This document shows positions 9,584 through 30,735 of a stretch of 64,000 bases of DNA, piece by piece (positions within the stretch are counted from its first letter, which is position 1; the number at the start of each line of letters is the position of its first letter). Below the pieces are notes generated by a model, which ran no database searches, was not told the DNA's origin, and saw only the letters and a program-made list of their open reading frames with translations. The translations under genes and the position numbers were made by a program. The DNA lies in IMG/VR virus record IMGVR_UViG_3300030419_004471, positions 124,001 to 188,000 of that record; one strand, 5' to 3'.

Positions 9584-9586
9584 ACC

Positions 9587-9802: not shown

Positions 9803-10690
9803 TTATTTCCATAATCCCATTTCGGAATTACATCCTGCTTCTGCTATTTTTTTAAATTCTTCTCTTCTATCTATGCCAGGTACAAAATCTGTAAGATGTT
9901 TGTTATTTCTGTATTTATAGTTTTCACAAACTACTAAATTTTTTATTTTGAATTGAATTCCTTCTTTGTGATGTTCACACCACCACATTATATATGTATC
10001 TTCTAAACCATAGTGTCCAAATGATTCAGGAACAGTCACCTTATCTAATAGTTCTTTAGATAAACAAGTAAACCAACCACCAGCAAATTTCATTCTTGGT
10101 TGTCCTATCACATTATTATTTACTGTTTCTATTCCAATGTTTCCATTCTTAATCCCACAATCTACAAATGGGTCATTTGTTTTTTGATAACCTAATGGTT
10201 CATTTAGGTATTGTTCATTTACTAAACAATCCCAAGTTGAATCCCATATACGAACTATTTCAGGAGTAACCACCGATAGTGGATACTTATCTTTTATAGA
10301 TTTAATAGAACTATCAATATAAGCAAGAGTTCTTTCATCGAATATGATATCTGTATCTAACCAAATATGATAATCTACATCTTTGTGAGTTTTCCAAGTT
10401 TTTCTTCTTTTCGATACACAACCCAAAACTTCTGATTTATCTTCAACTCTAAAGTATTTGTTAGTAATCCAATCTGATTGTTTTCTAAGTTTATCAAACT
10501 TACCAAAAAAGTACTCCATAGGAATTTTACTATTTTCCCATAACGTTAATTCACCAGTTAATGCTAATGTTATATCTAAAATAAAATCTTTTTCATCGAT
10601 ATAACGAAATGCTTTTTGTAGTTGAATTAATGTTAATTCTAAATCATCTATCTCGTGTGGTAAACAAAATATGGAAATACAATACTTCAT
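9803..10690 (-). CDS. GT-A fold glycosyltransferase
   Basis: WLDTD DxD motif, GGWF, YGLED. Confidence 0.7.
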   Translation of the reverse strand: MKYCISIFCLPHEIDDLELTLIQLQKAFRYIDEKDFILDITLALTGELTLWENSKIPMEYFFGKFDKLRKQSDWITNKYFRVEDKSEVLGCVSKRRKTWKTHKDVDYHIWLDTDIIFDERTLAYIDSSIKSIKDKYPLSVVTPEIVRIWDSTWDCLVNEQYLNEPLGYQKTNDPFVDCGIKNGNIGIETVNNNVIGQPRMKFAGGWFTCLSKELLDKVTVPESFGHYGLEDTYIMWWCEHHKEGIQFKIKNLVVCENYKYRNNKHLTDFVPGIDRREEFKKIAEAGCNSEMGLWK

Positions 10691-11085
10691 TATGCGTTAT
10701 AATCTACTTTAGTCCATTTATCATCTGAATCCATTCTGAAAGAACCTACATAAACTTGATTCCATTCATCAGGTGCTATTAGAGATAAGAATAGAGTTTC
10801 ATCTTTTTGTTGGTATAAATGATAAGTATGTCCTTTAATTGGTTCAAATCTAAACTCACTATTATATACTAACTTGTTCCACTCATATGCTTCTAATAAC
10901 TTTCTATACTCTTCTTTTATCTCTTCATAACGTGCTTCGAAGTAATGATTTGTCTTAATTAAGTTCTTTTGTTTGTATGAAGATATATCTGTTGTTCTAA
11001 TAGCTGGTGCTCCGACGTGGTCTCCATAAGGCATTATCGCCTTATTCTCTGCAAACATATCTGGTTTCTTTTTCTTTTTAGCCAT
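10690..11085 (-). CDS. DUF2452 family protein
   Basis: PYG..VGAPAI, FEPIKGHTYHLY, LSLIAPDEW. Confidence 0.75.
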   Translation of the reverse strand: MAKKKKKPDMFAENKAIMPYGDHVGAPAIRTTDISSYKQKNLIKTNHYFEARYEEIKEEYRKLLEAYEWNKLVYNSEFRFEPIKGHTYHLYQQKDETLFLSLIAPDEWNQVYVGSFRMDSDDKWTKVDYNA

Positions 11086-11311
11086 TACATTCACCATTAA
11101 CTATACAAGAATTATCCCAACCATCCTTCTGTGCATAACAAGAGTTCATATAAGTTGTTCCATCTGGTGCACATACTGGTTCATATATCTCTATACATAC
11201 AGCTCCTTTTGTATATTCTCCCTTAACACAAGTATCATCCTCTTCTTGACAAGATGTTAATAAAAACATTAGAAGCATAGAAGTCCAAAATGTTATTAAT
11301 ATATTTCTCAT
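11078..11311 (-). CDS. Kazal-type protease-inhibitor lipoprotein
   Basis: LTSC lipobox; CIEIYEPVCAPDGTTYMNSC Kazal signature; terminal GEC. Confidence 0.8.
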   Translation of the reverse strand: MRNILITFWTSMLLMFLLTSCQEEDDTCVKGEYTKGAVCIEIYEPVCAPDGTTYMNSCYAQKDGWDNSCIVNGECNG

Positions 11312-11787
11312 ACAACTACAACTAATTTTTTAGCTCCTTCAAATCCATACTTTAAACTATAAGTAAAAAGAAAATCACCAATTATTGTATTAACAAAAAA
11401 TGGTAATGCTAATACATAGCAACTTATTAATCCTTCTACTGTATGTGGGTATCCTAATAAGAAAACTCCAAAATTTGTAATTAAAAAGAACAATAATGAA
11501 CTACTAAATATTACTTTATTTGAAATTCTTTTAGAATTCATACCAATTAAAGATATTAACATAAATGATAAATAAACAAATATCGATATACTACTAAATC
11601 CTAAAAATAAATCAGATAGCCCCATACATAATAAAGGTAGTCCAAATGCTAACCATTTATTATCAAATCGGTTTCCACCAAATAAAGCTATTGCTGTTAT
11701 TGGAGCAACGTTAGGTGGGTGTGGTAATAATCTTGCTAATAATGCCAATACTATTAATAATAATACAACTTTATTTTTACTTATCAT
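11308..11787 (-). CDS. DUF6580-like membrane protein (ECF S-component-like)
   Basis: RLLPHPPNVAPITAIALF; FFLITNFG; multiple TM helices. Confidence 0.7.
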   Translation of the reverse strand: MISKNKVVLLLIVLALLARLLPHPPNVAPITAIALFGGNRFDNKWLAFGLPLLCMGLSDLFLGFSSISIFVYLSFMLISLIGMNSKRISNKVIFSSSLLFFLITNFGVFLLGYPHTVEGLISCYVLALPFFVNTIIGDFLFTYSLKYGFEGAKKLVVVV

Positions 11788-11983
11788 TGTTTTTCTTTTC
11801 TAATTTTATCCAAAATCTTTCAAATCCAAAATAACTTAATGTTTTAATTAGAGTATCTATTCCACCAATAGCTAAACCAAATTTCCAATTACCACTAACA
11901 AACCAACCTGATAATATAGTGATTGAGGTTGCTATACATCTCCAAATAATTGTTTTCGCTATTGTACTCCTATAACTTGTCAA
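11777..11983 (-). CDS. DUF2061 membrane protein
   Basis: STIAKTIIWR...K...YF.FERFW. Confidence 0.75.
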   Translation of the reverse strand: MTSYRSTIAKTIIWRCIATSITILSGWFVSGNWKFGLAIGGIDTLIKTLSYFGFERFWIKLEKKNNDK

Positions 11984-12777
11984 CTATATTTTTGGTATAT
12001 AAAATCTTTAAATTCTGGTATTCTATCATACTGATGAACTAAACAAAATGGTTCACCTTTTTGATTCTTAACAATATAATTTTCATCTACAATGGGTGTT
12101 GGTTCTAATAGAACATCTTTAAACTCATCTTTCTTTACTAATACAGTTCCCAATTGTGTAACAAATCCTTCTTCTTGATTTACTTTTTGTACATTTTGTA
12201 CGATACCATTTAAGTTAATTAGTACATTGTATGCAGCTTGGTCTGATAATTGGTCTGGATTCGATGTAGTCATACTCCATCTGTAGATGTTAATAAATAA
12301 ATCTCTAAGATATTCTGCTTCTCCAACTATTGTTCCAGCGCAATAAGATACTTTATTTTGTAACCATTCCCATTCCATAGGAAAAGATGTTCCACTATTT
12401 ACACAAGCCCAAGGGTCATCTTTCATAGTTATTGATTCTGAAAAAGCCATTATCTCATCATCCATATTATAATCAATCCATTCAGTAGGGTCTTTTTGAA
12501 ATATCACATCTTTTACATCTGTCCAAATAATCGTTTCATCTTTTGGAAACTGCTCTAACAATTTGTAGATATCTCTGAATCTTTGTAAGATGATATGTTG
12601 TTGTAATTCGTTCTGATACAACTCCCATCCTTTTGATTTAAGGTAATCAATAGTTTCTTGGGGTATATCATATACCATCATTACTTTTCTTCCCTTAAAA
12701 CCACTCTGATGGATTGATTCAACATAAGGTCTTATATCTTCTGGTCTATATTTTGTTATGCATCCTAATATTGTCAT
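11980..12777 (-). CDS. GT-A fold glycosyltransferase
   Basis: TDVKDVIFQ, CAGTIVG, DQAAYN, VHQYDR. Confidence 0.7.
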   Translation of the reverse strand: MTILGCITKYRPEDIRPYVESIHQSGFKGRKVMMVYDIPQETIDYLKSKGWELYQNELQQHIILQRFRDIYKLLEQFPKDETIIWTDVKDVIFQKDPTEWIDYNMDDEIMAFSESITMKDDPWACVNSGTSFPMEWEWLQNKVSYCAGTIVGEAEYLRDLFINIYRWSMTTSNPDQLSDQAAYNVLINLNGIVQNVQKVNQEEGFVTQLGTVLVKKDEFKDVLLEPTPIVDENYIVKNQKGEPFCLVHQYDRIPEFKDFIYQKYS

Positions 12778-13541
12778 AATTTAATTAAGTTATGGTCTTT
12801 ACATGCGGTTAATATTTCTATTCCCAATTCTTCATAATTTGGTACTTCCCAGTGTTCACATAATTTAGTATTCTGAATTATCTCATATCCAGCTAACATC
12901 ATAACATACTGAAATAAGAAATCTTGCCAACCATATATTTTATTTATTTTAGTAAAATCATCAAAAGGTTTTAAATATAAATCTAATGCCCTTTCATATG
13001 AATCCATATATTGAACTCTATTAAAAATAGTTCCTCCTCCACTAGCATAACCTGGACAATTATCCACTCCACCTACATGCCTTGAATAATCAAAATATTG
13101 ACCTGGAATATAATTTGCTCTCATTCTTCCTGTAGGTGATGGTGTTGTTGGGTGTATTGCCATAGAAAACTCTTCACTTAAAATACTGATTGGTTTTAAT
13201 ACAAAGTCATCTTCTTCGAATAACATAATATATTTTGAATCAGTTTTTTTACAAGCATCATAAATTCCTCTTAACCATTCTACTGCTTTTTCTTTTGTCC
13301 AATGTTCGTATCCTATATCCCTATCACCAAAGTTACCAGGATATCCTACTTGAAAATTATTTCTTGTAACAGTTGCTCCTATCTCCTTACCAACTTTAGT
13401 ATAATTTTCAATATCTCCATCGTAATCTACATTTATAAAAAGGTCTGCATCAGGATAAAACTTTTTTAAAGTTTGCATAGATTTCTTTCCTGCTTCCCAT
13501 TCAGTCCATGCCCACAAATATCCACTTATTAATTTACTCAT
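12774..13541 (-). CDS. putative glycosyltransferase (GT-A)
   Basis: MLFEEDD motif, GGGTIF, WQD; cluster context. Confidence 0.55.
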   Translation of the reverse strand: MSKLISGYLWAWTEWEAGKKSMQTLKKFYPDADLFINVDYDGDIENYTKVGKEIGATVTRNNFQVGYPGNFGDRDIGYEHWTKEKAVEWLRGIYDACKKTDSKYIMLFEEDDFVLKPISILSEEFSMAIHPTTPSPTGRMRANYIPGQYFDYSRHVGGVDNCPGYASGGGTIFNRVQYMDSYERALDLYLKPFDDFTKINKIYGWQDFLFQYVMMLAGYEIIQNTKLCEHWEVPNYEELGIEILTACKDHNLIKL

Positions 13542-13551
13542 AATTTATTTT

Positions 13552-13860
13552 TTAACATAATTCACATTCAGGCATAAACCAAAAGATTAGTATAATTAAC
13601 AGAATTGCTATTATTGTTACCAATATTCTAATTGGTCTTGATTGTTGTTCTTTCCATGCCCTAATTTTTAATCCCCACTTTGTACCTACTCTAGCAGCCC
13701 AATCAAATCCTCTACCTACCCAATCAAATGGTGGTACTTTTAAAAGTGTTACTAATCCTATAAGGAAACCTGTAAATCCTTCTCCTCCTACAATTAGTAA
13801 GATTGATGCTCCTAAGAAGTACCAACCTATGTATCTCTGTAAGTGTTGTTTCATATTCAT
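13552..13860 (-). CDS. small membrane protein
   Basis: Two to three hydrophobic segments; C-terminal CELC. Confidence 0.6.
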   Translation of the reverse strand: MNMKQHLQRYIGWYFLGASILLIVGGEGFTGFLIGLVTLLKVPPFDWVGRGFDWAARVGTKWGLKIRAWKEQQSRPIRILVTIIAILLIILIFWFMPECELC

Positions 13861-14528
13861 AATTGTTCGAAGTATCCTCCAATTTTAAATTTAACATCGG
13901 CTGTTACACTTCCTTTATCAGATGTTTTAAAATCATCAGGATGTACTACTCTAAAATCAATAGAACATCTCGTATCTTTTTCTTCGTTTGTTTGATTACC
14001 GTGCAAAAGATTTGGTCCACTAAATACTAAAATTTCACCATAAGATACATCGTAACCTTTGAAATCTTCTTTTCCTTCTTCTGATTCCATCCATATGGTG
14101 TTCGTTCCATATGCATCAGTAAATGGTAACCATAAGTTAATCTCATCTACTCCGTGATTGTAATCTCTATCTCTATGCCATTCACCAACCCCCAAGTTAT
14201 CAACTTGATGTACTCTAAATGTAGGAATCTTTTGATAAATTAAATTATCCCAGTTTCTTGATGTTCCCAAATATACACTATCATTCCAATTAAAATGCTC
14301 TACTACAACATCTCTAACAAATTCCCAATACAATGGATAAAATTCTGATTTGAATTTATCATAATATGTTTTGTGCCACATTGTAGCTTGGTCAGTAGGT
14401 TCAGTATATCTTTCATACTTCTTAACCTCGTGTAAATTTTCTAAACTTTTTTCACCTAAGATATCTTTTATCAAAGGTCTGAATTGATACTTAGATGTAT
14501 CGTATTTAATTTTATGTGTTTTTATCAT
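13857..14528 (-). CDS. 2OG-Fe(II) oxygenase-like protein (StrG-like)
   Basis: WHRD HxD, NLWLPFT, LHGN, TRCSIDFR. Confidence 0.7.
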   Translation of the reverse strand: MIKTHKIKYDTSKYQFRPLIKDILGEKSLENLHEVKKYERYTEPTDQATMWHKTYYDKFKSEFYPLYWEFVRDVVVEHFNWNDSVYLGTSRNWDNLIYQKIPTFRVHQVDNLGVGEWHRDRDYNHGVDEINLWLPFTDAYGTNTIWMESEEGKEDFKGYDVSYGEILVFSGPNLLHGNQTNEEKDTRCSIDFRVVHPDDFKTSDKGSVTADVKFKIGGYFEQL

Positions 14529-15199
14529 TCTGTTCTTTCTAATTTATATAAACTATTATCTACTGCTGATTTAAATTCATCATCCAACCACACAACATTA
14601 TCTTCACCAACTTGATTTACCATCGGTAAGTATAAGTTATGCATCCCAGAGTTAACTCCATGCGGAGGATTAGTTTCCATTTCCAATACTGCATCAAAAA
14701 ATGATTCCAACATTGAATATGGAAAAACTATAAATGTATCGTTTACTATTGGTAAATCCATAAACTCAGGTTCTCTCCAAAGAAAACTACACTTTGTAAA
14801 ATCATAATCATATTCTTCAAATGGATTTCTGAAAAAGTTTATATCATATCTAGTAGATATAACTAAATCTAAATCTTGATTGTAAAGTTGTTGTAAACTA
14901 TTTAGATATGAAACAGTCATTACTTTCATACCATTACCAACTCTATCACCACCACCTAATTTATTTAATTGCTGTTCTATAAATGTGTGTTTTATTGCTG
15001 GTGAATAATCTTCTACTATTTTATCTTGCTTTTCATTTTTATAACTGAAAAGGTAAAACTTTACTTCATGCCCATCTTTTCTCAATGGATTAACTACATT
15101 CTTATAAAAGTTTTGTATAGAGTTTTCATAATCTCTTAATCTACCGCCTTCTATTGCATTATTATAAGAAACTCCAACTAAATTAATTCCTATCTTCAT
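14525..15199 (-). CDS. putative glycosyltransferase-like protein (paralog of 16964-17638)
   Basis: MKIGINLVG; DLVISTRYD; ND.F. Confidence 0.5.
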   Translation of the reverse strand: MKIGINLVGVSYNNAIEGGRLRDYENSIQNFYKNVVNPLRKDGHEVKFYLFSYKNEKQDKIVEDYSPAIKHTFIEQQLNKLGGGDRVGNGMKVMTVSYLNSLQQLYNQDLDLVISTRYDINFFRNPFEEYDYDFTKCSFLWREPEFMDLPIVNDTFIVFPYSMLESFFDAVLEMETNPPHGVNSGMHNLYLPMVNQVGEDNVVWLDDEFKSAVDNSLYKLERTE

Positions 15200-15783
15200 A
15201 TGTTATATACTTTATTAATGGTTGGTATAAATTTTTTGTAAGTATCTAAATCACTATCATCTATATTACCTCTCTTATATATCTTTGGTTCGTGTTCATA
15301 ACAATCATCAACCGAAGGAATAGATTCTAATAATTTTAAAGAACCCAAAACAAACGCTGGAGCTATTTGTATTAATCTTTTATATAACTCCACCATTGTA
15401 TCTCCTTTAAATACAGGATATGTCATTTTACTAATAATCGGTCCTTTATCAAATACTTCTGTCATTTTATGGAAAGTTAAACCTTGTTCTATAGAATCTT
15501 CTTTTAAGGTATGATACAATATATCAGTTCCACCCCACTCAGGTAATAATCCCGTATGAACATTAAATGCGTTTTCCAAATTTAATAATCTTCTATTATA
15601 TTGTAGTGATAATTTTATATCATGCTCAACACTTTCATCAACAACTGGTAAACTCATTTCAGAACCAATAACAGGATTCTGAGAAGGAATATGTCCAACT
15701 AACTCATAATGATTTTGTAACAAATCACAAGTTACTTTTGTTAAGTGCGCAGAACCATAAATTAAAATCTTCTTTATTTCCAT
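15196..15783 (-). CDS. sugar N-formyltransferase
   Basis: NVHTGLLPEWGG; GLTFH; FDKGPII. Confidence 0.8.
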   Translation of the reverse strand: MEIKKILIYGSAHLTKVTCDLLQNHYELVGHIPSQNPVIGSEMSLPVVDESVEHDIKLSLQYNRRLLNLENAFNVHTGLLPEWGGTDILYHTLKEDSIEQGLTFHKMTEVFDKGPIISKMTYPVFKGDTMVELYKRLIQIAPAFVLGSLKLLESIPSVDDCYEHEPKIYKRGNIDDSDLDTYKKFIPTINKVYNI

Positions 15784-16964
15784 TTTTTAATACAATCTAC
15801 AATATATTCTCTTTGTTCTTTAGTTACCCACCAACCAACTGGTATCGAAACTACCTTATCAATTGTTTTTTCCAAATTAGGTAAATCAGTTTTAAACTCT
15901 TCCATACAACTATGTTTATCGTTTCTTTCGTGAACCTGAGATACCATAATGTTACACTCTTTCATATACTCATAGAACGAAGGTCTATCATCAACTAATA
16001 GTGAGTAAATCCAAAATGATGATTCAAATCCTTCTTCTCTTTTCAATAATGTAACTCCTTCTACATTTTGTAATTCAGAATCATAATAAGCTGCGTTATC
16101 TTTATGTTTACTAACAATATCATCTATATGTTTAAAATTCTCCATACCAACAGCTGCACATATATCATTCATATGAAACTTAAATCCCCATTCAGGAATA
16201 TCTGCTTCACATCTAAAATCAGTTCTACCCTTTGGATTTCTATCAATACCATACCATCTAAGTAATTTTGCTCTTTCATATAATTCATCATGCGGACAAA
16301 ATAATAAACCACCATCAACAGAGGTTATATGTTTGATTGCTTGTAATGAGTTCATCACAAAATTATTATGATTTCCTAAATATTTTCCTTTATACTTTGA
16401 ACCAAAAGCATGAGCCGCATCTTCTATCAATGCTGGTGCCCATCCATTCTTGCCTCTGAATTTAGCTCTGATATCTCTAATCTTATCTAAATCCAATGGA
16501 TATCCTCCCCAATGAACTCCCATAATAGCTTTTGTTTTTGGAGTCATCTTCTTTTCCAAATCCTCCAAACACATATTCAAAGTTGTTGGGTCAATATCTA
16601 CCCATTTGATTTTAAGATTGTTTGCTACGATTGGCCAATTAGATGCAGTACAAGTTAATGGTGTTGCTAATACCTCATCACCATCTTCTATACCAGGCCA
16701 ATTATGTTCTACAAAAGCAACTCCAAAAAATTCTTCTCTCCAATGTGGTTTTGGTTTTTTTAATAAATGTAATGCTAAATGTAAAGCTGATGTTCCAGCA
16801 TTTGTAGTTACTACTTTCTCATTACCAAAGTATTCCCCAAGTTGTTTTTCAAACTCATCTACTTTAGTTCCTTGTCCAATGTAACCACTATCTAATACTT
16901 CTCCAACTTTTTCTTTGGCAGTTGGTGCCATAAAAACTTTAAATAAAGGGATTGTTTCTTTCAT
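15774..16964 (-). CDS. DegT/DnrJ/EryC1/StrS PLP sugar aminotransferase
   Basis: GTSALHLA, EDAAHAFG, SLQAIKHITSVDGG. Confidence 0.92.
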   Translation of the reverse strand: MKETIPLFKVFMAPTAKEKVGEVLDSGYIGQGTKVDEFEKQLGEYFGNEKVVTTNAGTSALHLALHLLKKPKPHWREEFFGVAFVEHNWPGIEDGDEVLATPLTCTASNWPIVANNLKIKWVDIDPTTLNMCLEDLEKKMTPKTKAIMGVHWGGYPLDLDKIRDIRAKFRGKNGWAPALIEDAAHAFGSKYKGKYLGNHNNFVMNSLQAIKHITSVDGGLLFCPHDELYERAKLLRWYGIDRNPKGRTDFRCEADIPEWGFKFHMNDICAAVGMENFKHIDDIVSKHKDNAAYYDSELQNVEGVTLLKREEGFESSFWIYSLLVDDRPSFYEYMKECNIMVSQVHERNDKHSCMEEFKTDLPNLEKTIDKVVSIPVGWWVTKEQREYIVDCIKKWK

Positions 16965-19922: not shown

Positions 19923-20224
19923 TTTTTAAGAATACCTAACAATTGATGTTCATTAAATAAAAGAAATTTATCATCTCCCATTTTGATTTCATCGCCTGCC
20001 ATATCTTTAGCATACATAACTTTATCACCAACTTTAACTGTCATTGGTATTCGTTCTCCTGTTTGTGAAAAAATACCAGTTCCAACTGATACTACTTCAC
20101 CATATACTTTTTGTCCTCTTGTTGCACTATCTGCTATGATAATACCGCTTTTTGTTTTCATTTCGCCAGAGTCTATCTTTACAAGTACTCTGTCTCCTAA
20201 TGGTCTAAATTTACCTTCTTCCAT
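19919..20224 (-). CDS. groES: co-chaperonin GroES
   Basis: RPLGDRVLV, TKSGII, VVSVGTG, VKVGDKV. Confidence 0.92.
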   Translation of the reverse strand: MEEGKFRPLGDRVLVKIDSGEMKTKSGIIIADSATRGQKVYGEVVSVGTGIFSQTGERIPMTVKVGDKVMYAKDMAGDEIKMGDDKFLLFNEHQLLGILKK

Positions 20225-20954
20225 GCTTACCTTCGTCTAAATGACAAAATAACCCTTCACCATGCGCTACTTTGTATGTTTGTTTTGCCCACCACTTTGA
20301 AATATTACCTTCTAATGCAATACCCTCACCAGCGAACTGTTTAACTGTTTCTAAATAAAAATCCTTTTTGTATAAACAAGGATTATTTGTCCAATTACCA
20401 TAACGAGAAGTGGTGATAAAATATTCACCATCTCTTTTTATATGTTCTGGAAACTTTTCAGCTGGGTTACACCAATGAACCGAATCCAATAAATGAGGTG
20501 ATGTACATTCAATCTCTTTATCGTAATAGTCTAATTCTCTTCCTTGATATTGGAATGAGAAGTGTGGAAATCCCGGATTAGCTCTGTGTCTATATCTTAC
20601 ACAACTAAATCCATTATCTAATAATTTCACTCCACTTAACAATCTTGTTCTTGCGAGTTCTTTATCTTCTATTAATTTCCAATCATGCTCTAATACTAGA
20701 ACATTTTCTGTTTTAGCTTGTTCGGTAAGTTCTATAAATGCACTACCGATGCCAATGTTTTCTTTTTTTGCGATATATGGAATCCCAAAATGATTTGCTA
20801 TATCTTTATCTTGTTCTGAGAATTCTTGAAATAGGATACAAACATCATTAATCTGATGTAGAAATTCTTGATTGAAATATGTTTGTAGTGTGTTAACTAA
20901 AGTTTGTCCACTGTTCCATGCTAAAATTCCTATACTTATTGGGAGTTTTTCCAT
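20211..20954 (-). CDS. GT2-like glycosyltransferase
   Basis: ISIGILAWN, ENIG, LEHDW, TNNP. Confidence 0.65.
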   Translation of the reverse strand: MEKLPISIGILAWNSGQTLVNTLQTYFNQEFLHQINDVCILFQEFSEQDKDIANHFGIPYIAKKENIGIGSAFIELTEQAKTENVLVLEHDWKLIEDKELARTRLLSGVKLLDNGFSCVRYRHRANPGFPHFSFQYQGRELDYYDKEIECTSPHLLDSVHWCNPAEKFPEHIKRDGEYFITTSRYGNWTNNPCLYKKDFYLETVKQFAGEGIALEGNISKWWAKQTYKVAHGEGLFCHLDEGKHGRR

Positions 20955-21838
20955 TCTTCGTATTTATCAATTATAAAATCAACTCTTTGCTTTTGTGTAT
21001 GGTTATCTAATACTTTTCTATATCCATTCTCAGCTATTCTTTCTCTCTCTTTATTATCATCTGCATATTTGTTCATTTTGTTAATACAATCAACCATATC
21101 ATTATAGTAAACTATATCCTCACCATCAACAAATAGTTCATCTAATCTTTTTGATTTATTTAATCTATCAGTTAGTACCATTTTTTTACAAGCCATTCCT
21201 TCAAATATTCTACGAGTAATTTCACCCCATCTACTATGTTGAAGTACTATCATACCACTATTTAAAAATTGAGTATGTTCATCAGATTCCATTCCATTTT
21301 TATTACCAATACTTCCAGCTGAATGTGCAGTTATAGTATCTAAAAACTGAGAACCTCCCATACCTCTAGTTGTAACTGCTATAAATTGATTTTCAACTTC
21401 TTCTATTGGATATTGAACTCTTGTATCTGCAAAGTGTGTCCACCAATAAGCATTTCTTCCTCTTTTCTTATATTCTTCAGCTGATTCATAATCAGGTGAA
21501 AGAGTCATATGAAATCTTTCAGATTTTGGATAGTTGTTTTCAAAATTTTGTGGGTCATCTCCACTCTCTTGTACCCAAAATGCTGATGGTAGTTTTTCTT
21601 TATCTAATTCTGGTGAATCAAATCTACCCCAATCCATAAACAATACGATATTAGAATCATCTTCTTTACTTAACCAATCTTTAATATTATCATCAAAGTA
21701 TTGACCTGTTCTATTTGAACCTATGGAAACTATATTAACATCCCATCCTCTATCTTCAAACTCATAAGCTAATGATAATGGTGTTGACCACTTCTCACCA
21801 TCATATGCATATACAAATGTTATTTTAGATTGTTTCAT
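20936..21838 (-). CDS. GT-B glycosyltransferase (CgeB/Glyco_trans_1_2-like)
   Basis: DDP, RIFEGMAC, RERIAENG..V...HT. Confidence 0.78.
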   Translation of the reverse strand: MKQSKITFVYAYDGEKWSTPLSLAYEFEDRGWDVNIVSIGSNRTGQYFDDNIKDWLSKEDDSNIVLFMDWGRFDSPELDKEKLPSAFWVQESGDDPQNFENNYPKSERFHMTLSPDYESAEEYKKRGRNAYWWTHFADTRVQYPIEEVENQFIAVTTRGMGGSQFLDTITAHSAGSIGNKNGMESDEHTQFLNSGMIVLQHSRWGEITRRIFEGMACKKMVLTDRLNKSKRLDELFVDGEDIVYYNDMVDCINKMNKYADDNKERERIAENGYRKVLDNHTQKQRVDFIIDKYEEWKNSQ

Positions 21839-22448
21839 AAAATTCGTTTTGTTTTTCCTGTCTTTCAATTTTTTTGTGATGATATAAACAATATTCTTCT
21901 TGTGGAGGAAAGTTTGAAACAGTATCATAACCTGTAATTCTTTCGTGAACTTTATTCATCCACATTATTTCTGGTGTGTTTCTATAAACTCTAGTTTGAT
22001 AATCAGGGAAATTAACCCAACCTTTATCACTTACATTCCATCCCCATTTTTTAATATGTTCATCTGTTAATCCTTCAACAGTATTTATTCTTGGAATAAA
22101 AATAACATCAACTTCATTACCATCCAATATATCAGCTAATGAACTTGCTAAGTATTCATTTGGAATTTCATCTGCATCAATCTGAAAAATATAATCTTTG
22201 GTACAATGTGATTTTAAATTATTTTTAAATGATGCGAAATCTTTATTTAATGGAAATGCAATTACTTTGTATCCGTGCATCTTTTCCATTATTTTTAGAT
22301 ATTCCAATACTTCATCAGTAACCGATGATTCATCATACTGAACAACTACTTCATCATTTTCATTTGAGTGTAATTGTAAAAAGTTTAGAAGATTCGTTAT
22401 CTCTTCTAATTCATTACATACTGTTATTGCGTAACTAATCGTTTTCAC
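21825..22448 (-). CDS. GT2 glycosyltransferase
   Basis: ISYAITVCNE, IDADE, PDYQTR, VHE. Confidence 0.85.
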   Translation of the reverse strand: MKTISYAITVCNELEEITNLLNFLQLHSNENDEVVVQYDESSVTDEVLEYLKIMEKMHGYKVIAFPLNKDFASFKNNLKSHCTKDYIFQIDADEIPNEYLASSLADILDGNEVDVIFIPRINTVEGLTDEHIKKWGWNVSDKGWVNFPDYQTRVYRNTPEIMWMNKVHERITGYDTVSNFPPQEEYCLYHHKKIERQEKQNEFYETI

Positions 22449-22962
22449 TTCTATCTTGTTTTAATACGTCTTTAATTTCTGCTTTTGTATCTGTCTCTTC
22501 ATTAAATAATTTTACTAATGCATCATATTCAAAAACTACTTCACTAGCGTTTTGTATTTTATCTATAAAATATGTTCTATAGTTACCTAATCTATAGGAA
22601 TAGACAGCTCTATTATTTTTAATAAACCCATCAAATAATCTTTTACCTGGTGCATCAAATTTTTTCAATAAAGATGCCAAATCTTTATAATCTGGTGTTA
22701 TTGGGTTAGTTTTATCTCTTAGCTTTCTAAGCATTGATATTAAGGATGTTGGTAATACCTCATTAATTTTTATACAATGTAATTTCATCTTACCTCCATC
22801 AGAAACTCTACCAATTACAAAAACATATCTTGCATCAGGTCCTCTTTTAGTATCACCACCATAGTTAACAAGTCTGTAAATATTTCCTTGTTTTATCTGA
22901 GCTTTAGCTACTCTTCTTTCTGGTTTAAGAAACTCTAAATATTGATTTATATAATTTGGCAT
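22435..22962 (-). CDS. hypothetical phage protein (weak resemblance to T4 gp2 end protector)
   Basis: GNIYRLVNY...YRTY pattern; function tentative. Confidence 0.4.
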   Translation of the reverse strand: MPNYINQYLEFLKPERRVAKAQIKQGNIYRLVNYGGDTKRGPDARYVFVIGRVSDGGKMKLHCIKINEVLPTSLISMLRKLRDKTNPITPDYKDLASLLKKFDAPGKRLFDGFIKNNRAVYSYRLGNYRTYFIDKIQNASEVVFEYDALVKLFNEETDTKAEIKDVLKQDRSEND

Positions 22963-24224
22963 TATAACTTTTTAATTTCAGGTAATTTTAAACTTACAAA
23001 CTCTGGTAGTTTGATATATTTATCCATAATTTTTCCGAACTTCTCATGCATTGCTTTTAAAGAAAAGTTTTTCTTTGTATTATTAACTAATCCTTTTGAT
23101 TTATTTGAATAAGTTTTATAATCGTTAAATACTTTATCAATCATACCAGCCGCATAAGAGTAATTTAATTGATACCATTTTGCTTCTTTTAATAAGAACT
23201 TATCTGCAACACTTGGATGAATATTATCCAATGCTCCTTCTAAAAATACAGTGTTCTCTTCTGGTAAGAAATCTAAATGCCCACTCCATTTGGATACTAA
23301 GATAGGTTTTCCTGTTAGTGAGAATTCACATAATGGTCTCCCATATCCCTCACCTTTAGTAAAAGATATCATAGCTTTTACTTTTGGATGATGATACAAA
23401 GATGCCATTTCATCTTCATGCAAATCACCAAATAAAAGATATATTGGTGGACAGTTATCTCCGAATTGAGATTTTATTGATTTAATCTTAGCTGATATAT
23501 CTTCTCTATCAATAACTGAGAATCCAGCTGAAGATGTTTTTAATATTAATCCTGGTTGTTTATTTTTTGGAGTATTTTTAAAAACAGTACAGAATGTTTG
23601 AATCATCATACCAACATCCTTTCTATCTTTACCTAAATCTCCTTTTAACCAATGCCCAACAAAAAGATAATTCCAATCAGTTTCTATCCCTTCTAAAACA
23701 TCTTTTTCTGTTTTAGGATTTAAAAATGTTTCTAATTGAACTCCCTCATGCAAAACTTCTATAGGTGTAGTTACCTTATGTTGTTTTACAACTTTATTTG
23801 TTCTCTTATCTCTTTCATCATATATAGTATTTGCCAATGTAGCTTTAGAGAATTCTGTAGGTACTATAATCAAATCCATTCTATTACATCCATCAATCCA
23901 ATCTTTTGGTGCTAATGTTGATTCAATACCAGCCGTTATACCAATACTAAACTTAGCTCTTTTTTGGAATTCATTTGGTACTGTCATTTGAATATGAACC
24001 TCTGGTTGTTTATCTACTGGTCTTGCACAACTTTCTAATAATTTTTTACCAAAATCTGTTGTTGGATTTATTTGATTTTGTGGTGTAGTACCCCAACGAG
24101 TTGGAATAGTATGTACATCAAACTTATCATATTCAAAAATTGATTTCAAGATATCTCTTGAATGGTCACCATATCCACTTCTTGTTGCAACTGGCGCCTG
24201 ATATATTAATAATGGTTTACTCAT
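22962..24224 (-). CDS. GT4-like GT-B glycosyltransferase
   Basis: SGYG, RKD, KGEGYGRPLCE. Confidence 0.85.
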   Translation of the reverse strand: MSKPLLIYQAPVATRSGYGDHSRDILKSIFEYDKFDVHTIPTRWGTTPQNQINPTTDFGKKLLESCARPVDKQPEVHIQMTVPNEFQKRAKFSIGITAGIESTLAPKDWIDGCNRMDLIIVPTEFSKATLANTIYDERDKRTNKVVKQHKVTTPIEVLHEGVQLETFLNPKTEKDVLEGIETDWNYLFVGHWLKGDLGKDRKDVGMMIQTFCTVFKNTPKNKQPGLILKTSSAGFSVIDREDISAKIKSIKSQFGDNCPPIYLLFGDLHEDEMASLYHHPKVKAMISFTKGEGYGRPLCEFSLTGKPILVSKWSGHLDFLPEENTVFLEGALDNIHPSVADKFLLKEAKWYQLNYSYAAGMIDKVFNDYKTYSNKSKGLVNNTKKNFSLKAMHEKFGKIMDKYIKLPEFVSLKLPEIKKL

Positions 24225-24225
24225 C

Positions 24226-25617
24226 TTATTTTATTTTGTATAAATTATATCTCTTTTTAGGTTTCCAGTTCTTTATTGCTTTCTCAATACCATCTGCCAT
24301 ACATTTATTTTGGTTATCTACATTTAATCCTAAATCCCCTAAAAATGCTTCTCTTCCAGCTTTTCCAGCTTTTTTTCTACCTTCATCACCTTTATCATAC
24401 CAATATCTAATTGCTTGTGCAACTTCAGTTACATCAACTTTATCATCAATAATATAAGGTGTTGGAACTGAACCTGTCATTGTTTGTACTCTACTCCATA
24501 CGGGCTTTACCCATTCACCGTGAGTTACTTTATCTTCCCAATCTCTCCAATTATGAAGTGAACCAATTTTCTTATAATCTTCTGCAGTAAATAATTTACC
24601 ATCTGATTTCTTTCTAAATCCACATTGGTCTTGCAATCCACCAGTAATGTTTACTATAATTGGTGTTTCAGCCATTACTGATTCAGCGGTTGTTAATCCG
24701 AATCCTTCATTACCTGCTATATTGATTGTAACATCAGCTAAGTTGTATAGATAATTTAATTGTTGTGTATCTATTCTTGCTGTTGAAAATCTAACATCAT
24801 AATCAGGACAAATATTATCTTTTACTGCAAATAAATTTGTTCCATTTTGGTCGATAGGTTGTGTGTGCATCACTAAACAACACTTATCTCTATCTTCTTC
24901 AGGTAAACCATCTACAAATTGTTTGTATGCCCATATAACATCTGATGGTTGTTTTCTTTTAATATTTCTATTCATCCAAAATAAAACAAATTTATAATCT
25001 TTATCACCTAATATTTGTTTTTTGAAATCATCAGGAATATCATTTACTTCTTTAAAACTTTCAGAATTAATACCGTGTGGTACATAATCTACTTGCCAAT
25101 CTTCTAATGGTGTAATGGTTTCTGAATCTAATTTACCTAACCTACTTACTATACCATAAGTTTGTCTTGATATACATCCTAACCAATCACAACTTTCATA
25201 ATAATCTCTATTATATTTTGGGTCAGGTAAGTCATCCCATATATGATAAAATAATATTGGAATGTTTTCTCTAATCTCTGCTTCAATATCATATAACCAT
25301 CTCCAATATCTTGGGTCTGTAAAATGTAATATAGCATCTGGGTTATGTCTCATTATCAATTGCCTTAAAACATCTGGGTCTCCATACCCAGTCCAAGGAA
25401 TTATCTTTAATGATGCATCTTCAACGCCAGTTTGTTTTCTAACATCTGCACCCAAATCTATTTCTTTACCTTTATCAGGATGATTTACAGCTGCACCTAA
25501 CTGAACCCAATGGAATCTATCTAAAGTTCCCATAACAAATTCTTTAGATACTGTTGCTATACCTGATGTCATTCTTAAATCATCAGATAGTAATAGAATC
25601 TTCTTTTTTTCTGCCAT
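24226..25617 (-). CDS. GT4-like GT-B glycosyltransferase
   Basis: NRNIKRKQ, NEGFGLTTAES, TGGLQDQ. Confidence 0.85.
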   Translation of the reverse strand: MAEKKKILLLSDDLRMTSGIATVSKEFVMGTLDRFHWVQLGAAVNHPDKGKEIDLGADVRKQTGVEDASLKIIPWTGYGDPDVLRQLIMRHNPDAILHFTDPRYWRWLYDIEAEIRENIPILFYHIWDDLPDPKYNRDYYESCDWLGCISRQTYGIVSRLGKLDSETITPLEDWQVDYVPHGINSESFKEVNDIPDDFKKQILGDKDYKFVLFWMNRNIKRKQPSDVIWAYKQFVDGLPEEDRDKCCLVMHTQPIDQNGTNLFAVKDNICPDYDVRFSTARIDTQQLNYLYNLADVTINIAGNEGFGLTTAESVMAETPIIVNITGGLQDQCGFRKKSDGKLFTAEDYKKIGSLHNWRDWEDKVTHGEWVKPVWSRVQTMTGSVPTPYIIDDKVDVTEVAQAIRYWYDKGDEGRKKAGKAGREAFLGDLGLNVDNQNKCMADGIEKAIKNWKPKKRYNLYKIK

Positions 25618-25627
25618 TAATTGTTAT

Positions 25628-25768
25628 TTAAATTGTTCTGAATCTTCGTGATGAATTCCAATATACTCTTGGTGTATTACCTAAGTATTTTTTACGATAT
25701 ATTCTATCGTTGAAATCATTACGGATGGAATTTAATTGTGTATTACCGTTTTCTTGATTTTGTTTCAT
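25628..25768 (-). CDS. 46-aa hypothetical protein missing from the ORF track
   Basis: Hand-translated MKQNQENGNTQLNSIRNDFNDRIYRKKYLGNTPRVYWNSSRRFRTI; fills the gap exactly. Confidence 0.6.
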   Translation of the reverse strand: MKQNQENGNTQLNSIRNDFNDRIYRKKYLGNTPRVYWNSSRRFRTI

Positions 25769-25770
25769 TT

Positions 25771-25965
25771 TTAAAATTGCGAACCACTTACTTCTAATAA
25801 TGTGTATTCATTGATTTCTTCCCTAAAATCTTTATCTTCAACATATTTATCAACCGCTCTATTAACTAATTTTTGAAGTGTAATGTCCGAATCAAAAGAT
25901 AAACTTTTAAACTTGGAGTAAACATTTTTCAGAATCTTTACTGTTGTTAATTTTGTTTCTACCAT
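25771..25965 (-). CDS. small ribbon-helix-helix-like DNA-binding protein
   Basis: LTTVKI strand followed by two helices (TLQKLVNRAV). Confidence 0.55.
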   Translation of the reverse strand: MVETKLTTVKILKNVYSKFKSLSFDSDITLQKLVNRAVDKYVEDKDFREEINEYTLLEVSGSQF

Positions 25966-25985
25966 AATCTCTTTTATTTGTTATA

Positions 25986-26003
25986 TATAAGTATATATAA
26001 ATA
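25986..26003 (-). promoter_or_regulatory. tandem late motifs (TATTTATA and TACTTATA) heading the glycan island
   Basis: + strand tataagta 25986-25993 and tataaata 25996-26003. Confidence 0.55.
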
Positions 26004-26022
26004 TAAGAAAATTATAAAAACA

Positions 26023-30734: not shown

Positions 30735-30735
30735 T

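What the first reader, a model, noticed from the sequence alone, without database searches (positions are those of the whole stretch)
9803..26003. ~16-kb phage glycan-biosynthesis island including an N-formyl-amino-sugar pathway
Seen: about ten GT-like genes (GT-A and GT-B), DegT aminotransferase directly followed by a formyltransferase, a nucleotidyltransferase-HAD/HAD/GDPD trio and a 2OG oxygenase, headed by an RHH gene and tandem late motifs. No flippase, Wzy or ABC exporter is visible. Known: DegT plus formyltransferase yields N-formylated NDP-sugars. Inference: late timing without an exporter favours cytoplasmic glycosylation of virion proteins over host capsule conversion.
Basis: partly seen in the sequence, partly recalled or inferred. 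Interest (0 to 1): 0.6.

Follow-up and report, generated by a model that had tools for sequence, protein, structure and literature searches.

The report
Jumbo phage glycan-synthesis gene island
A tightly packed 16-kb block of 24 genes in an uncultured marine jumbo T4-like phage encodes many sugar-adding enzymes and a route to a rare N-formylated amino sugar; it most likely puts a complex glycan on a target that is conserved among related phages (probably virion proteins), but that target is not shown.

Summary
Window 9803-26005 (minus strand) is one compact block of 24 ORFs with no internal promoter-like motif. Two tandem copies of a genome-wide motif head it; the same motif precedes the portal, terminase, sheath and capsid operons.

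Five glycosyltransferases are solid, two are probable and three are leads only. DegT overlaps a short formyltransferase with an intact Asn-His-Asp triad. The DegT-formyltransferase pair recurs in five other phage contigs. In close relatives a GNAT acetyltransferase fills the formyltransferase slot. The ribbon-helix-helix (RHH) and GDPD labels are unverified. GroES and four membrane or secreted genes sit inside the island but are not glycan genes.

The island has two layers. The proximal GT module occurs in over 500 viral contigs and in cultured Flavobacterium, Microcystis and Rhodothermus phages, and is as conserved as the DNA polymerase. The distal sugar-tailoring part is a variable cassette zone. 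The genome holds two more sugar clusters, including an RmlB homologue, but no initiating phosphoglycosyltransferase and no flippase-like protein.

DNA glycosylation and a DpdN-type base formylase are largely excluded. Virion-protein glycosylation is the best reading (about 0.4); host-envelope remodelling remains a serious rival.

The parts
25986..26005 (-). Tandem promoter-like motifs heading the island: TATATTTATA (26005-25996) and the ATACTTATA variant (25994-25986)
   Evidence: The motif is strongly enriched in intergenic DNA. The same forms precede the portal, TerL operon, sheath and scaffold-capsid operon.
25771..25965 (-). 64-aa very conserved protein; RHH-like pattern only
   Evidence: Present in 80/80 related loci at 64-92% identity. 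No significant family or PDB match.
24226..25617 (-). Core GT-B (GT4-type) glycosyltransferase, 463 aa
   Evidence: PF00534, with an E-x7-E motif. Best PDB match is chlorovirus B736L, E 1.9e-9. Found in 510 viral contigs at 73-85% identity. As conserved as PolB.
22962..24224 (-). Second core glycosyltransferase, 420 aa
   Evidence: phrog_2170 glycosyltransferase, E 1.9e-13 over the full length. Syntenic in 71/80 loci.
22435..22962 (-). Core 175-aa protein of unknown role; small beta-barrel fold
   Evidence: Syntenic in relatives. AlphaFold2 pLDDT 83; no convincing structural match.
21825..22448 (-). GT-A (GT2) glycosyltransferase, 207 aa
   Evidence: PF00535, E 2e-10. 67-74% identical in relatives.
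20936..21928 (-). Glyco_trans_1_2 (GT-B C-terminal type) protein, 330 aa
   Evidence: PF13524, E 2.5e-24.
20211..20954 (-). Probable GT-A glycosyltransferase, 247 aa
   Evidence: GT2 E 0.014. Profile hit to TarS (PDB 5tze), E 0.039, over 200 residues. Invariant E-x-D-W motif.
19919..20224 (-). GroES (Cpn10) co-chaperonin; a passenger, not a glycan gene
   Evidence: PF00166, E 3.5e-26. It sits at different places in relatives.
18555..19922 (-). Fusion of a beta-phosphoglucomutase-like HAD domain with a sugar-1-phosphate nucleotidyltransferase
   Evidence: PF13419 + PF00483; TIGR02009/TIGR01990 and rmlA_long. 84-89% identical in most relatives. 66-70% nucleotide identity to T4-like cyanophage genes.
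18127..18555 (-). Small HAD-like phosphatase, 142 aa (weak assignment)
   Evidence: phrog_1238, E 5e-23; TIGR01689, E 4e-4; HAD_PNKP, E 0.028.
17639..18127 (-). Short GDPD-like protein, 162 aa (weak assignment)
   Evidence: Invariant H-R-G...E-x-D N-terminus. Profile against PDB GDPD, E 0.015, covering the first 50 residues only. phrog_34507.
16964..17638 (-). 224-aa paralogue A of a WavE/DUF7796-like family (possible transferase)
   Evidence: hhalign 95% to 14525-15199. DUF7796, E 0.1. phrog_13607.
15774..16973 (-). DegT-family PLP sugar aminotransferase, C-4 type by best matches
   Evidence: PF01041, 247 bits. PDB AtmS13/CalS13 at E 1e-117 and 1e-104, then ArnB and perosamine synthase. SLQAIK lysine motif.
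15196..15783 (-). Short N-formyltransferase, 195 aa, overlapping DegT by 10 nt
   Evidence: PF00551, 46 bits. N74/H76/D112 aligned to FMT and ArnA. The DegT-FT pair recurs. A GNAT replaces it in relatives.
14525..15199 (-). 224-aa paralogue B of the WavE/DUF7796-like family
   Evidence: Atlas lead WavE at 0.96. hhalign 95% to 16964-17638.
13857..14528 (-). Probable 2OG-Fe(II) oxygenase of the 'sporadic carbohydrate cluster' type
   Evidence: TIGR04324 partial match, E 2.5e-12. It follows the formyltransferase directly in L105 and L106.
13552..13860 (-). 102-aa protein with two predicted TM segments
   Evidence: Hydropathy scan.
12774..13541 (-). 255-aa unassigned protein with a conserved E-D-D motif
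   Evidence: No family match. Alignment.
11980..12777 (-). Probable GT-A-type nucleotide-sugar transferase, 265 aa
   Evidence: GT8, E 0.023. Atlas lead Nucleotid_trans at 0.97. Invariant D87/D90.
10690..11983 (-). Four-gene insert with no glycan signature: DUF2061, DUF6580 (5 TM), Kazal-like lipoprotein, DUF2452
   Evidence: In relatives the two flanking genes are adjacent (L089, L032).
9803..10690 (-). GT-A fold glycosyltransferase, 295 aa; last gene of the block
   Evidence: AlphaFold2 pLDDT 91; Foldseek TarP/TarS/ppGalNAcT, E 2e-8; invariant W-L-D-T-D-I. 1281 homologues, none annotated.

Best explanation
The island is one late-type transcription unit of an uncultured marine jumbo T4-like myovirus (213.6 kb). 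The phage is related to Flavobacterium phage Immuto and Microcystis phage Mel-JY01, and its promoter style suggests a Bacteroidota host.

The island has two layers. The proximal layer is a lineage-core set of soluble glycosyltransferases (GT-B 463 aa, GT 420 aa, a 175-aa beta-barrel protein, a GT2, then further GTs) plus a mutase-nucleotidyltransferase fusion that supplies an NDP-hexose. The distal layer is a variable cassette zone that tailors the sugar and adds more transferases.

In this phage the cassette is a C-4 aminotransferase plus an N-formyltransferase. With the RmlB homologue encoded elsewhere in the genome, the inferred product is an NDP-4-formamido-4,6-dideoxyhexose. With the phage UDP-glucose dehydrogenase and a decarboxylase, it could instead be a 4-formamido-pentose.

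The enzymes lack membrane anchors, an initiating phosphoglycosyltransferase and any exporter. The glycan is therefore probably assembled in the cytoplasm, late in infection, on an acceptor conserved across the lineage, most likely virion proteins such as fibres or capsid decoration.

Shown: gene identities, synteny, conservation, motif distribution. Inferred: the sugar's identity, the timing, the acceptor.
For: Gene identities.

One unit: genes abut or overlap and there is no perfect motif inside.

Late-type head: both motif forms also precede the portal, TerL operon, tube-position gene, sheath and scaffold-MCP operon. A different motif, with a Bacteroidota-like -7 box, marks the early and replication regions.

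N-formyl sugar:
- DegT-FT adjacency recurs in L104, L106, L107/L108, L109 and L110.
- A GNAT occupies the FT slot in L024 and L091.
- An RmlB homologue lies at genome 33206-34096, E 8e-60. Further SDRs, an RmlC-like gene and Ugd lie elsewhere.

Conserved acceptor:
- The GT-B occurs in 510 contigs and in cultured phages of Flavobacterium, Microcystis and Rhodothermus.
- It is 74-79% identical to five relatives, against 75-80% for PolB.
- Its N-terminal (acceptor-side) half is more conserved than its C-terminal half (80% against 73%).

No lipid-carrier route: no Bac_transf match and no protein with 8 or more TM segments.

Other sugar genes are interleaved with TerL, the portal and a fibre gene.

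Not DNA: ThyA is canonical, no Tet_JBP match, and Immuto DNA contains only dA, dC, dT and fdPreQ1 (PMC10516641).
Against: - No virion glycan or glycoprotein has been observed for this phage or any relative. I found no paper reporting one.
- Timing rests on motif association only. The island lies directly downstream of the replication module and of a PD-(D/E)XK gene with a hybrid early/late-type promoter, so earlier read-through is possible.
- No gp55 or gp45 homologue was detected with cyanophage queries.
- Lack of an exporter is weak evidence, because host Wzx/Wzy, ABC systems and carriers could be used.
- Envelope-directed genes lie inside or next to the island: PAP2, a lipoprotein, signal-peptide proteins and DUF6580.
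- Three of the 'GT-like' genes, the GDPD label and the RHH label are unverified.
- No conspicuous Ser/Thr-rich acceptor tails were found on capsid proteins.
Confidence: 0.42

Rival explanations
1. Host-envelope remodelling. The phage enzymes make unusual NDP-sugars and extend host lipid-linked or LPS/capsule intermediates at the inner membrane. Host flippases or ABC systems then export the product, changing the infected cell's surface, for example to block superinfection or to stop progeny re-adsorbing to debris.
For: This is the usual reading of similar 'cell-wall synthesis and modification' clusters in large T4-like cyanomyoviruses (PMC12801897). PAP2, a lipoprotein, signal-peptide proteins and small membrane proteins sit in or beside the island. 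The variable distal cassette zone resembles O-antigen and capsule loci. WavE-like and TarP/TarS-like similarities point to envelope glycan enzymes.
Against: No initiating phosphoglycosyltransferase, flippase, polymerase or ABC exporter is present anywhere in the genome. The GT core is conserved like PolB across phages whose hosts belong to different phyla, with the acceptor-side half the more conserved. The head motifs are late-type, which leaves little time for surface display.
Confidence: 0.3
2. The island is not one pathway. Part of it (GDPD-like, HAD phosphatases, some GTs), together with the neighbouring PAP2, makes small glycosides or glycolipids, or scavenges phosphate from lipids. Only some genes build a glycan.
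For: The GT-B has weak matches to TreT, monoglucosyl-diacylglycerol synthase, BshA and MshA. The GDPD/HAD/PAP2 set and a PHO4-like transporter are phosphate-related. GroES and four unrelated genes show that the block tolerates passengers.
Against: Seven to ten transferases plus an amino-sugar tailoring cassette are far more than a small-molecule route needs. The genes are translationally coupled under one head motif. All the matches behind this idea are far below curated cut-offs.
Confidence: 0.12
3. DNA hypermodification. The transferases glycosylate phage DNA, as T4 alpha- and beta-glucosyltransferases do, which would fit the position next to replication genes, a nuclease and two Mom paralogues.
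For: The island follows PolB, helicase, RNR, two Mom-family genes and a PD-(D/E)XK nuclease. Phage GT-B enzymes can act on DNA, and T4 a-gt also resembles B736L in HHpred (PMC6024577).
Against: The only thymidylate-synthase homologue is a canonical ThyA with the dUMP-specifying Asn. No Tet_JBP match was found, though the control for that search was silent. Pfam gave no T4 glucosyltransferase match. Immuto carries the same GT core, yet its DNA yields only dA, dC, dT and fdPreQ1. Mom genes accompany the island in only 4 of 80 related loci.
Confidence: 0.04
4. The formyltransferase is a DpdN-type enzyme that formylates dPreQ1 in DNA, as proposed for Immuto, and not a sugar N-formyltransferase.
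For: Immuto, the closest cultured relative, has G fully replaced by fdPreQ1 and encodes a PF00551 enzyme for it (PMC10516641).
Against: This genome has no homologue of DpdA, FolE, QueE or QueF (phmmer and tblastn). The formyltransferase shares only 28% identity over 88 residues with Immuto DpdN. It overlaps DegT, and that pairing recurs in other contigs. A GNAT replaces it in relatives.
Confidence: 0.02

Closest known systems
Autonomous glycosylation systems of giant viruses: the Mimivirus viosamine route (4,6-dehydratase R141, DegT-type aminotransferase L136, N-acetyltransferase L142) and chlorovirus capsid-glycan GTs including B736L/A546L
   Same: A virus-encoded NDP-sugar pathway (dehydratase, C-4 aminotransferase, N-acyl transferase) plus many soluble GTs and no exporter. 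The island's GT-B has chlorovirus B736L as its best PDB match (PMC9614988). The Mimivirus enzyme names are from my own knowledge.
   Different: This is a tailed phage of bacteria. The N-acyl step is formyl here. No glycan on virions has been shown. B736L's own acceptor is unknown.
'Cell-wall/LPS synthesis and modification' gene sets of large T4-like cyanomyoviruses (P-SSM2, S-SCSM1, S-SCSM2R)
   Same: Large marine T4-like phages carrying up to 13 GTs, NDP-sugar epimerases, RmlC and TagD-like genes, with function untested (PMC12801897). The HAD-nucleotidyltransferase gene is shared at 66-70% nucleotide identity.
   Different: Here there is a different GT core, which is lineage-wide and as conserved as PolB, and a DegT plus formyltransferase cassette.
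Mycobacteriophage virion O-glycosylation (Freeman et al. 2023)
   Same: Phage-encoded GTs glycosylate capsid and tail-tube proteins in the cytoplasm without an exporter (as summarised in PMC12619734).
   Different: Those phages carry one to a few GTs and no sugar-tailoring pathway, are siphoviruses of Actinobacteria, and share no sequence relationship tested here.
Bacterial NDP-formamido-sugar pathways (ArnB/ArnA-N for UDP-Ara4FN; VioA/VioF; WlaRD; perosamine formyltransferases)
   Same: A DegT-family aminotransferase followed by a PF00551 enzyme with the Asn-His-Asp triad. ArnA, WlaRD, the perosamine formyltransferase and VioF all appear among the PDB matches.
   Different: The phage enzyme is much shorter (195 aa, with a trimmed N-terminal subdomain and no extra C-terminal domain). 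It is no closer to sugar formyltransferases than to FMT or PurN by sequence. Its substrate is unknown.
[quoted passage not shown]
   Same: The same order: PD-(D/E)XK, a small ORF (annotated in Immuto only), GT-B, second GT, then a GT2/GT-A, with a small unknown ORF before it in Immuto. DegT follows in Immuto.
   Different: Their distal genes differ (methyltransferases, a second WecE, an epimerase, a 'pilin glycosylation protein'). Neither has the formyltransferase in the island; Immuto's PF00551 gene is DpdN in the 7-deazaguanine cluster.

Membership tests
DegT/DnrJ/EryC1/StrS sugar aminotransferases | Family profile match above the curated cut-off over the full length | tested here: met
   PF01041, 246.8 bits against a cut-off of 19.8. 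PDB AtmS13/CalS13, E about 1e-117 and 1e-104.
DegT/DnrJ/EryC1/StrS sugar aminotransferases | PLP-binding lysine in the S-x-x-x-x-K motif | tested here: met
   SLQAIK at residues 209-214. Reading this as the PLP lysine rests on my knowledge of the family.
Sugar N-formyltransferases (PF00551 fold acting on NDP-amino sugars) | Formyl_trans_N match and the Asn-His-Asp catalytic triad | tested here: met
   46 bits against a cut-off of 26.1. N74, H76 and D112 align to the FMT and ArnA motifs.
Sugar N-formyltransferases (PF00551 fold acting on NDP-amino sugars) | Genomic coupling to the aminotransferase that makes the substrate | tested here: met
   10-nt overlap with DegT. The same pair occurs in L104, L106, L109 and L110; in L107/L108 the two are separated by one 220-aa ORF. 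A GNAT fills the same slot in L024 and L091.
Sugar N-formyltransferases (PF00551 fold acting on NDP-amino sugars) | Formylation of an NDP-amino sugar with N10-formyl-THF | not testable with these tools
   Needs an enzyme assay.
DpdN dPreQ1 formyltransferase / 7-deazaguanine DNA modification | Co-occurrence with DpdA and the FolE-QueD-QueE-QueC-QueF pathway | tested here: not met
   No homologue of Immuto DpdA, FolE, QueE or QueF by phmmer or tblastn; one marginal QueD hit (phmmer E 0.0013); FT against DpdN gives 28% over 88 aa.
GT-A fold glycosyltransferases (for 9803-10690) | GT-A Rossmann-like fold with a DxD motif | tested here: met
   pLDDT 91 model. Foldseek TarP, TarS, ppGalNAcT and hyaluronan synthase, E 2e-8 to 1e-6, TM about 0.5. 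Invariant D112-T-D114.
GT4-type GT-B glycosyltransferases (for 24226-25617) | Glycos_transf_1 match and the E-x7-E motif | tested here: met
   PF00534, 30.2 bits against a cut-off of 26.4. E304-x7-E312. B736L, E 1.9e-9.
Wzx/Wzy- or ABC-dependent surface polysaccharide loci | Initiating polyprenyl-phosphate phosphoglycosyltransferase | tested here: not met
   No PF02397 match in the genome. WecA-type PF00953 was not searched, but no protein has 8 or more TM segments.
Wzx/Wzy- or ABC-dependent surface polysaccharide loci | Flippase, polymerase or ABC exporter | tested here: not met
   Hydropathy scan of all 269 ORFs: the maximum is 7 TM, in a weak PHO4-like protein. The scan is crude and no family search for Wzx, Wzy or ABC was run.
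T4-type DNA glycosylation | Source of a hydroxymethylated base (dCMP/dUMP hydroxymethylase or TET/JBP) | tested here: not met
   The single TS homologue is a canonical ThyA. No Tet_JBP match, but that search's control was silent.
Virus-autonomous virion glycosylation | Virus-encoded soluble GTs plus own NDP-sugar supply | tested here: met
Virus-autonomous virion glycosylation | Glycan covalently attached to virion proteins | not testable with these tools
Ribbon-helix-helix regulators (for 25771-25965) | Significant match to an RHH family or structure | tested here: inconclusive
   Antitox_RHH, E 0.19. No RHH among the PDB profile hits. The strand-helix-helix pattern is visible only by eye.
Glycerophosphodiester phosphodiesterases (for 17639-18127) | Full TIM-barrel GDPD domain | tested here: inconclusive
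   No Pfam GDPD match. The profile matches only the first 50 residues of PDB GDPDs, E 0.015. At 162 aa the protein is too short for the whole domain.

The most novel reading that the evidence does not exclude
A deep branch of T4-like myoviruses carries a core, phage-autonomous protein-glycosylation machine comparable to that of giant viruses. The branch includes this marine jumbo lineage, Immuto, Mel-JY01 and possibly RM378. The machine would build complex, cassette-variable glycans on virion proteins, here carrying an N-formylated 4-amino sugar. It would be the first such system in tailed phages of Gram-negative bacteria.
Probability: 0.3. Interest if true: 0.75.

Novelty: new variant of a known kind. 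Interest (0 to 1): 0.5.

Why it matters
Large sugar-gene sets in marine T4-like phages are usually filed as host-surface 'auxiliary' genes and left untested. Here the proximal transferases behave like core genes. They are as conserved as the DNA polymerase, occur in over 500 viral contigs, and are shared with cultured phages of Flavobacterium and Microcystis. That makes the question testable now: stain and mass-analyse virions of Immuto or Mel-JY01.

If virions are glycosylated, tailed phages of Gram-negative hosts would join giant viruses and mycobacteriophages in making their own coats. That would bear on adsorption, grazing, particle stickiness and carbon export in the sea.

The acetyl-to-formyl cassette swap also gives a natural experiment in glycan diversification, and a very short N-formyltransferase for enzymology.

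Tried and rejected
- Profile-profile comparisons of the unassigned proteins with the GT-A alignments gave nothing. The profiles were shallow (Neff about 2), so this says little.
- The 175-aa core protein: Foldseek and VIA-align gave only generic small beta-barrel matches (best Z 5.2), so no function is assigned.
- The RHH claim: Pfam, PHROGs and a PDB profile search gave no significant hit.
- T4 late-transcription factors: phmmer with S-CAM9 gp55 and gp45 found nothing. This is weak, as these proteins diverge fast.
- The standard sigma-70 promoter and terminator scan was no better than shuffled sequence.
- The plain T4 late box TATAAATA is not enriched on either strand (18 observed against 17.6 expected). 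The real motif is its near-complement on the coding strand.
- A Ser/Thr-rich acceptor-tail scan gave no convincing candidates.
- A first idea, that the pathway makes UDP-Ara4FN through an ArnA-like decarboxylase, lost ground. The SDR next to the UDP-glucose dehydrogenase proved to be an RmlB homologue. A pentose route through another SDR is not excluded.
- DpdN and the 7-deazaguanine pathway were rejected.
- DNA glycosylation was rejected as unlikely.
- Literature searches for Mel-JY01 and for phage sugar N-formyltransferases returned nothing relevant.

Full report
**Setting.** The window is bases 124001-188000 of a 213,601-bp IMG/VR virus record that CheckV rates as complete. The genome is about 30% G+C, and 263 of 269 ORFs lie on the minus strand. 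It encodes a T4-type gp23 capsid protein, gp18 sheath, gp20 portal and T4-type TerL. Its PolB is closest to Microcystis phage Mel-JY01 (53%) and then to T4-like cyanophages (about 34%). It is therefore a jumbo, distantly T4-like myovirus. One promoter class has a Bacteroidota-like -7 box (TAnnTTTG), and the nearest cultured phage with a syntenic island infects Flavobacterium. A Flavobacteriia host is likely but not shown.

**The observation.** All 24 ORFs of 60 aa or more between 9803 and 25965 are on the minus strand. They abut or overlap, except for a 153-nt gap after the first gene.
- Five glycosyltransferases are solid:
  - 24226-25617 is a GT4-type GT-B with an E-x7-E motif.
  - 22962-24224 matches a phage GT family over its full length.
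  - 21825-22448 is a GT2.
  - 20936-21928 is Glyco_trans_1_2.
  - 9803-10690 had no family match but gave a pLDDT-91 model with a GT-A fold (TarP, TarS, ppGalNAcT; E 2e-8) and an invariant DxD motif.
- Two more are probable GT-A enzymes on convergent weak evidence: 20211-20954 and 11980-12777.
- Three are leads only. Two are paralogues with WavE/DUF7796-like features, and one is an unassigned protein with an EDD motif.

DegT (247 bits) overlaps a 195-aa formyltransferase by 10 nt. That enzyme is above the Pfam cut-off and keeps the Asn-His-Asp triad. The 455-aa protein is a beta-phosphoglucomutase-like HAD domain fused to a sugar-1-phosphate nucleotidyltransferase. The small HAD, the GDPD-like protein, the 2OG oxygenase and especially the 'RHH' head gene rest on weak or sub-threshold matches.

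In relatives the two genes that flank this four-gene set are adjacent, so it is an insertion.

**Head motifs and timing.** The plain T4 late box is not enriched. On the coding strand, however, TATATTTATA occurs mostly 10-50 nt before start codons. 33 of 38 occurrences are intergenic, in a genome that is 5% intergenic. A variant, ATACTTATA, behaves likewise.
- The first form precedes the portal gene, the operon that contains TerL, and the gene in the tail-tube position.
- The variant precedes the sheath gene and the scaffold-capsid operon.
- The island head carries one copy of each, back to back, at 26005-25986. No perfect copy lies inside the block.
- A second, longer motif (CCTTGGA, a spacer, then TTCGTATATTT) is confined to the early and replication regions.

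The 'tandem late motifs' are therefore real, and the late label is reasonable by association. It is not proven. There are no expression data. No gp55 homologue was found. The PD-(D/E)XK gene immediately upstream has a hybrid of both motif types and no terminator follows it, so earlier read-through is possible.

**Two layers.** A search with the first GT-B found 510 viral contigs encoding it at 73-85% identity. In the 20 loci with enough flank, the proximal order is constant: PD-(D/E)XK nuclease, the 64-aa protein, GT-B, the 420-aa GT, the 175-aa protein, then GT2. Next come, usually, Glyco_trans_1_2, the probable GT-A, the HAD-nucleotidyltransferase and the GDPD-like gene. Beyond that point the content differs from contig to contig.

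The same head order occurs in Flavobacterium phage Immuto and, with some differences in the small ORFs, in Microcystis phage Mel-JY01; the GT-B alone is also found in Rhodothermus phage RM378. Against five relatives, PolB is 75-80% identical and the GT-B 74-79%. This transferase is a core gene of the lineage, not a sporadic passenger. Its N-terminal half, the acceptor side in GT-B enzymes, is more conserved than its donor-binding half. The figures are 80% against 73%, and 44-55% against 37-49% in distant relatives.

**The N-formyl sugar.** None of the 80 related loci holds the formyltransferase. In the closest ones (L024, L091), the slot after DegT holds a 142-146-aa GNAT-type acetyltransferase. 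The DegT-formyltransferase pair does recur:
- in a distant relative whose core GTs are only 42% identical, although its DegT is 84% identical (L104);
- in L106, where the 2OG oxygenase follows;
- in three further metagenomic contexts, once with an SDR dehydratase immediately upstream of DegT.

About 218 clusters of such short formyltransferases exist in metagenomes. This is the behaviour of an exchangeable N-acylation cassette acting on the DegT product.

DegT's best structural relatives are AtmS13 and CalS13, followed by ArnB and perosamine synthase. From my own knowledge these are all C-4 aminotransferases.

The island has no dehydratase, but the genome supplies one. An RmlB homologue (E 8e-60) lies at genome 33206-34096, next to a UDP-glucose dehydrogenase. 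Four more SDRs and an RmlC-like gene lie elsewhere. The simplest complete route runs from hexose phosphate to NDP-hexose, then 4-keto-6-deoxyhexose, then 4-amino sugar, then 4-formamido sugar. A pentose version is not excluded.

**A rival for the formyltransferase.** Immuto DNA has all guanine replaced by fdPreQ1. A PF00551 enzyme, DpdN, is proposed to add the formyl group (PMC10516641). I fetched that Immuto cluster and searched this genome. No DpdA, FolE, QueE or QueF homologue was found. The island's formyltransferase shares only 28% identity over 88 residues with DpdN. That reading is rejected.

**What is glycosylated?**
- *DNA is unlikely.* The single thymidylate-synthase homologue is a canonical ThyA, and no TET/JBP match was found (control silent). 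Immuto, which carries the same GT core, yields only dA, dC, dT and fdPreQ1 on nucleoside analysis. The two Mom paralogues upstream accompany the island in only 4 of 80 loci.
- *A self-contained surface-polysaccharide pathway is also unlikely.* The genome lacks a Bac_transf initiating enzyme and any protein with 8 or more predicted TM segments.
- *Two readings remain.* Either a phage-encoded acceptor is glycosylated in the cytoplasm, or host lipid-linked intermediates are extended and then exported by host machinery.

- The GT core is conserved like a replication gene across phages of Bacteroidota and Cyanobacteria.
- Its acceptor side is the better conserved half.
- The head motifs are those of structural operons.
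- The genome's other sugar genes, including two GT7-lectin fusions, are interleaved with TerL, the portal and a fibre gene that carries a Peptidase_S74 chaperone.

The best PDB match to chlorovirus B736L fits this picture but adds little, since that enzyme's acceptor is unknown.

The case is circumstantial. Similar clusters in cyanomyoviruses are usually read as host-surface modifiers. Envelope-directed genes sit in and beside the island.

I put virion glycosylation at about 0.4, host-envelope remodelling at 0.3, a mixed or non-glycan role for part of the block at 0.1, and DNA at under 0.05.

**Comparison and novelty.** The closest known systems are:
- giant-virus autonomous glycosylation, including the dehydratase-aminotransferase-acetyltransferase route to N-acetylviosamine in Mimivirus;
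- the untested 'cell-wall modification' gene sets of large cyanomyoviruses;
- mycobacteriophage virion O-glycosylation;
- bacterial formamido-sugar pathways.

The island is a new variant of this known kind. New here are the core status and breadth of the GT module, the acetyl/formyl cassette exchange, and a very short formyltransferase coupled to DegT in phages. I found no report of that last feature in the searchable library, which is limited evidence.

**Verdict.** This is a real and well-delimited island. The glycan and N-formyl-sugar annotation is sound. The virion-glycosylation reading is plausible and now testable in cultured relatives, but it is unproven. Interest 0.5.

Noticed in passing
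window 26933-28481 (minus strand): Two tandem Mom-family paralogues (PF25680, E about 1e-45 each; 215 bits to each other) sit just upstream of the nuclease and island. They accompany the island in only 4 of 80 related loci. They suggest an adenine modification of this phage's DNA.
   Followed up: partly
L014 6960-19402 and L015 994-14096 (genome 6960-34096): A second, larger sugar cluster lies outside the window. It holds a 1202-aa cytidylyltransferase-HD protein, three SDRs, an RmlC-like gene, a split TPP E1-like enzyme, two GT7 (beta4GalT-like)-Laminin_G_3 fusions, a TagD-like cytidylyltransferase, a GT2_4, a UDP-glucose dehydrogenase and an RmlB homologue. It is interleaved with TerL, the portal and a 1528-aa fibre gene.
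   Followed up: partly
L019 2339-10893 (genome 102339-110893): A third sugar-related cluster holds three methyltransferases (one TylF-like), a GalE/UXS-like SDR and a PfkB sugar kinase. An SDR 44% identical to this one lies near the DegT-formyltransferase pair in L104.
   Followed up: partly
whole genome; in the window e.g. 5939, 46024, 54223, 55170: A second promoter-like class (CCTTGGA, about 17 nt, TTCGTATATTT, resembling the Bacteroidota -7 box) is confined to genome 70-130 kb and 170-180 kb. The nuclease gene at 26023-26880 has a hybrid of both classes.
   Followed up: partly
L024 20112-20540; L091 17917-18357: In close relatives a 142-146-aa GNAT-type acetyltransferase occupies the exact slot of the formyltransferase after DegT. 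This is an N-acyl cassette swap.
   Followed up: yes
window 19919-20224: A GroES gene is embedded in the island. In relatives it lies at varying places, some 2-7 kb upstream of the nuclease. Immuto has GroES and GroEL nearby.
   Followed up: partly
window 7628-9780: Just downstream of the island, each with its own promoter-like motif (the main form before the 61-aa ORF and PAP2, the ATACTTATA variant before the 409-aa gene): a lysine-rich 61-aa ORF, a PAP2-family phosphatase and a 409-aa protein with a signal peptide. All point to the host envelope.
   Followed up: no
window 18555-19922: The HAD-nucleotidyltransferase fusion is 84-89% identical in most relatives, more than PolB. It also shares 66-70% nucleotide identity with genes of T4-like cyanophages (S-CAM9, S-PRM1, B3). 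This suggests strong constraint or recent exchange.
   Followed up: no
genome 10724-13649, 38213-39388, 71377-72621, 123240-124391 (the last reaches window 1-391): A five-member paralogous family of 383-487-aa proteins; the two members scanned against Pfam gave no match. Two tandem copies sit beside the second sugar cluster.
   Followed up: no
window 25628-25768 (minus strand): The only sizeable gap in the island holds a 46-aa ORF. The 153-nt spacing between the 64-aa gene and the GT-B is kept in the closest relatives.
   Followed up: no
L111 10009-17016 (Immuto record 30008-37015): Immuto's 7-deazaguanine cluster (QueD, QueE, FolE, DpdA, DpdN, QueF) has no counterpart in this genome. Related phages with the same GT core therefore differ in DNA chemistry.
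   Followed up: yes
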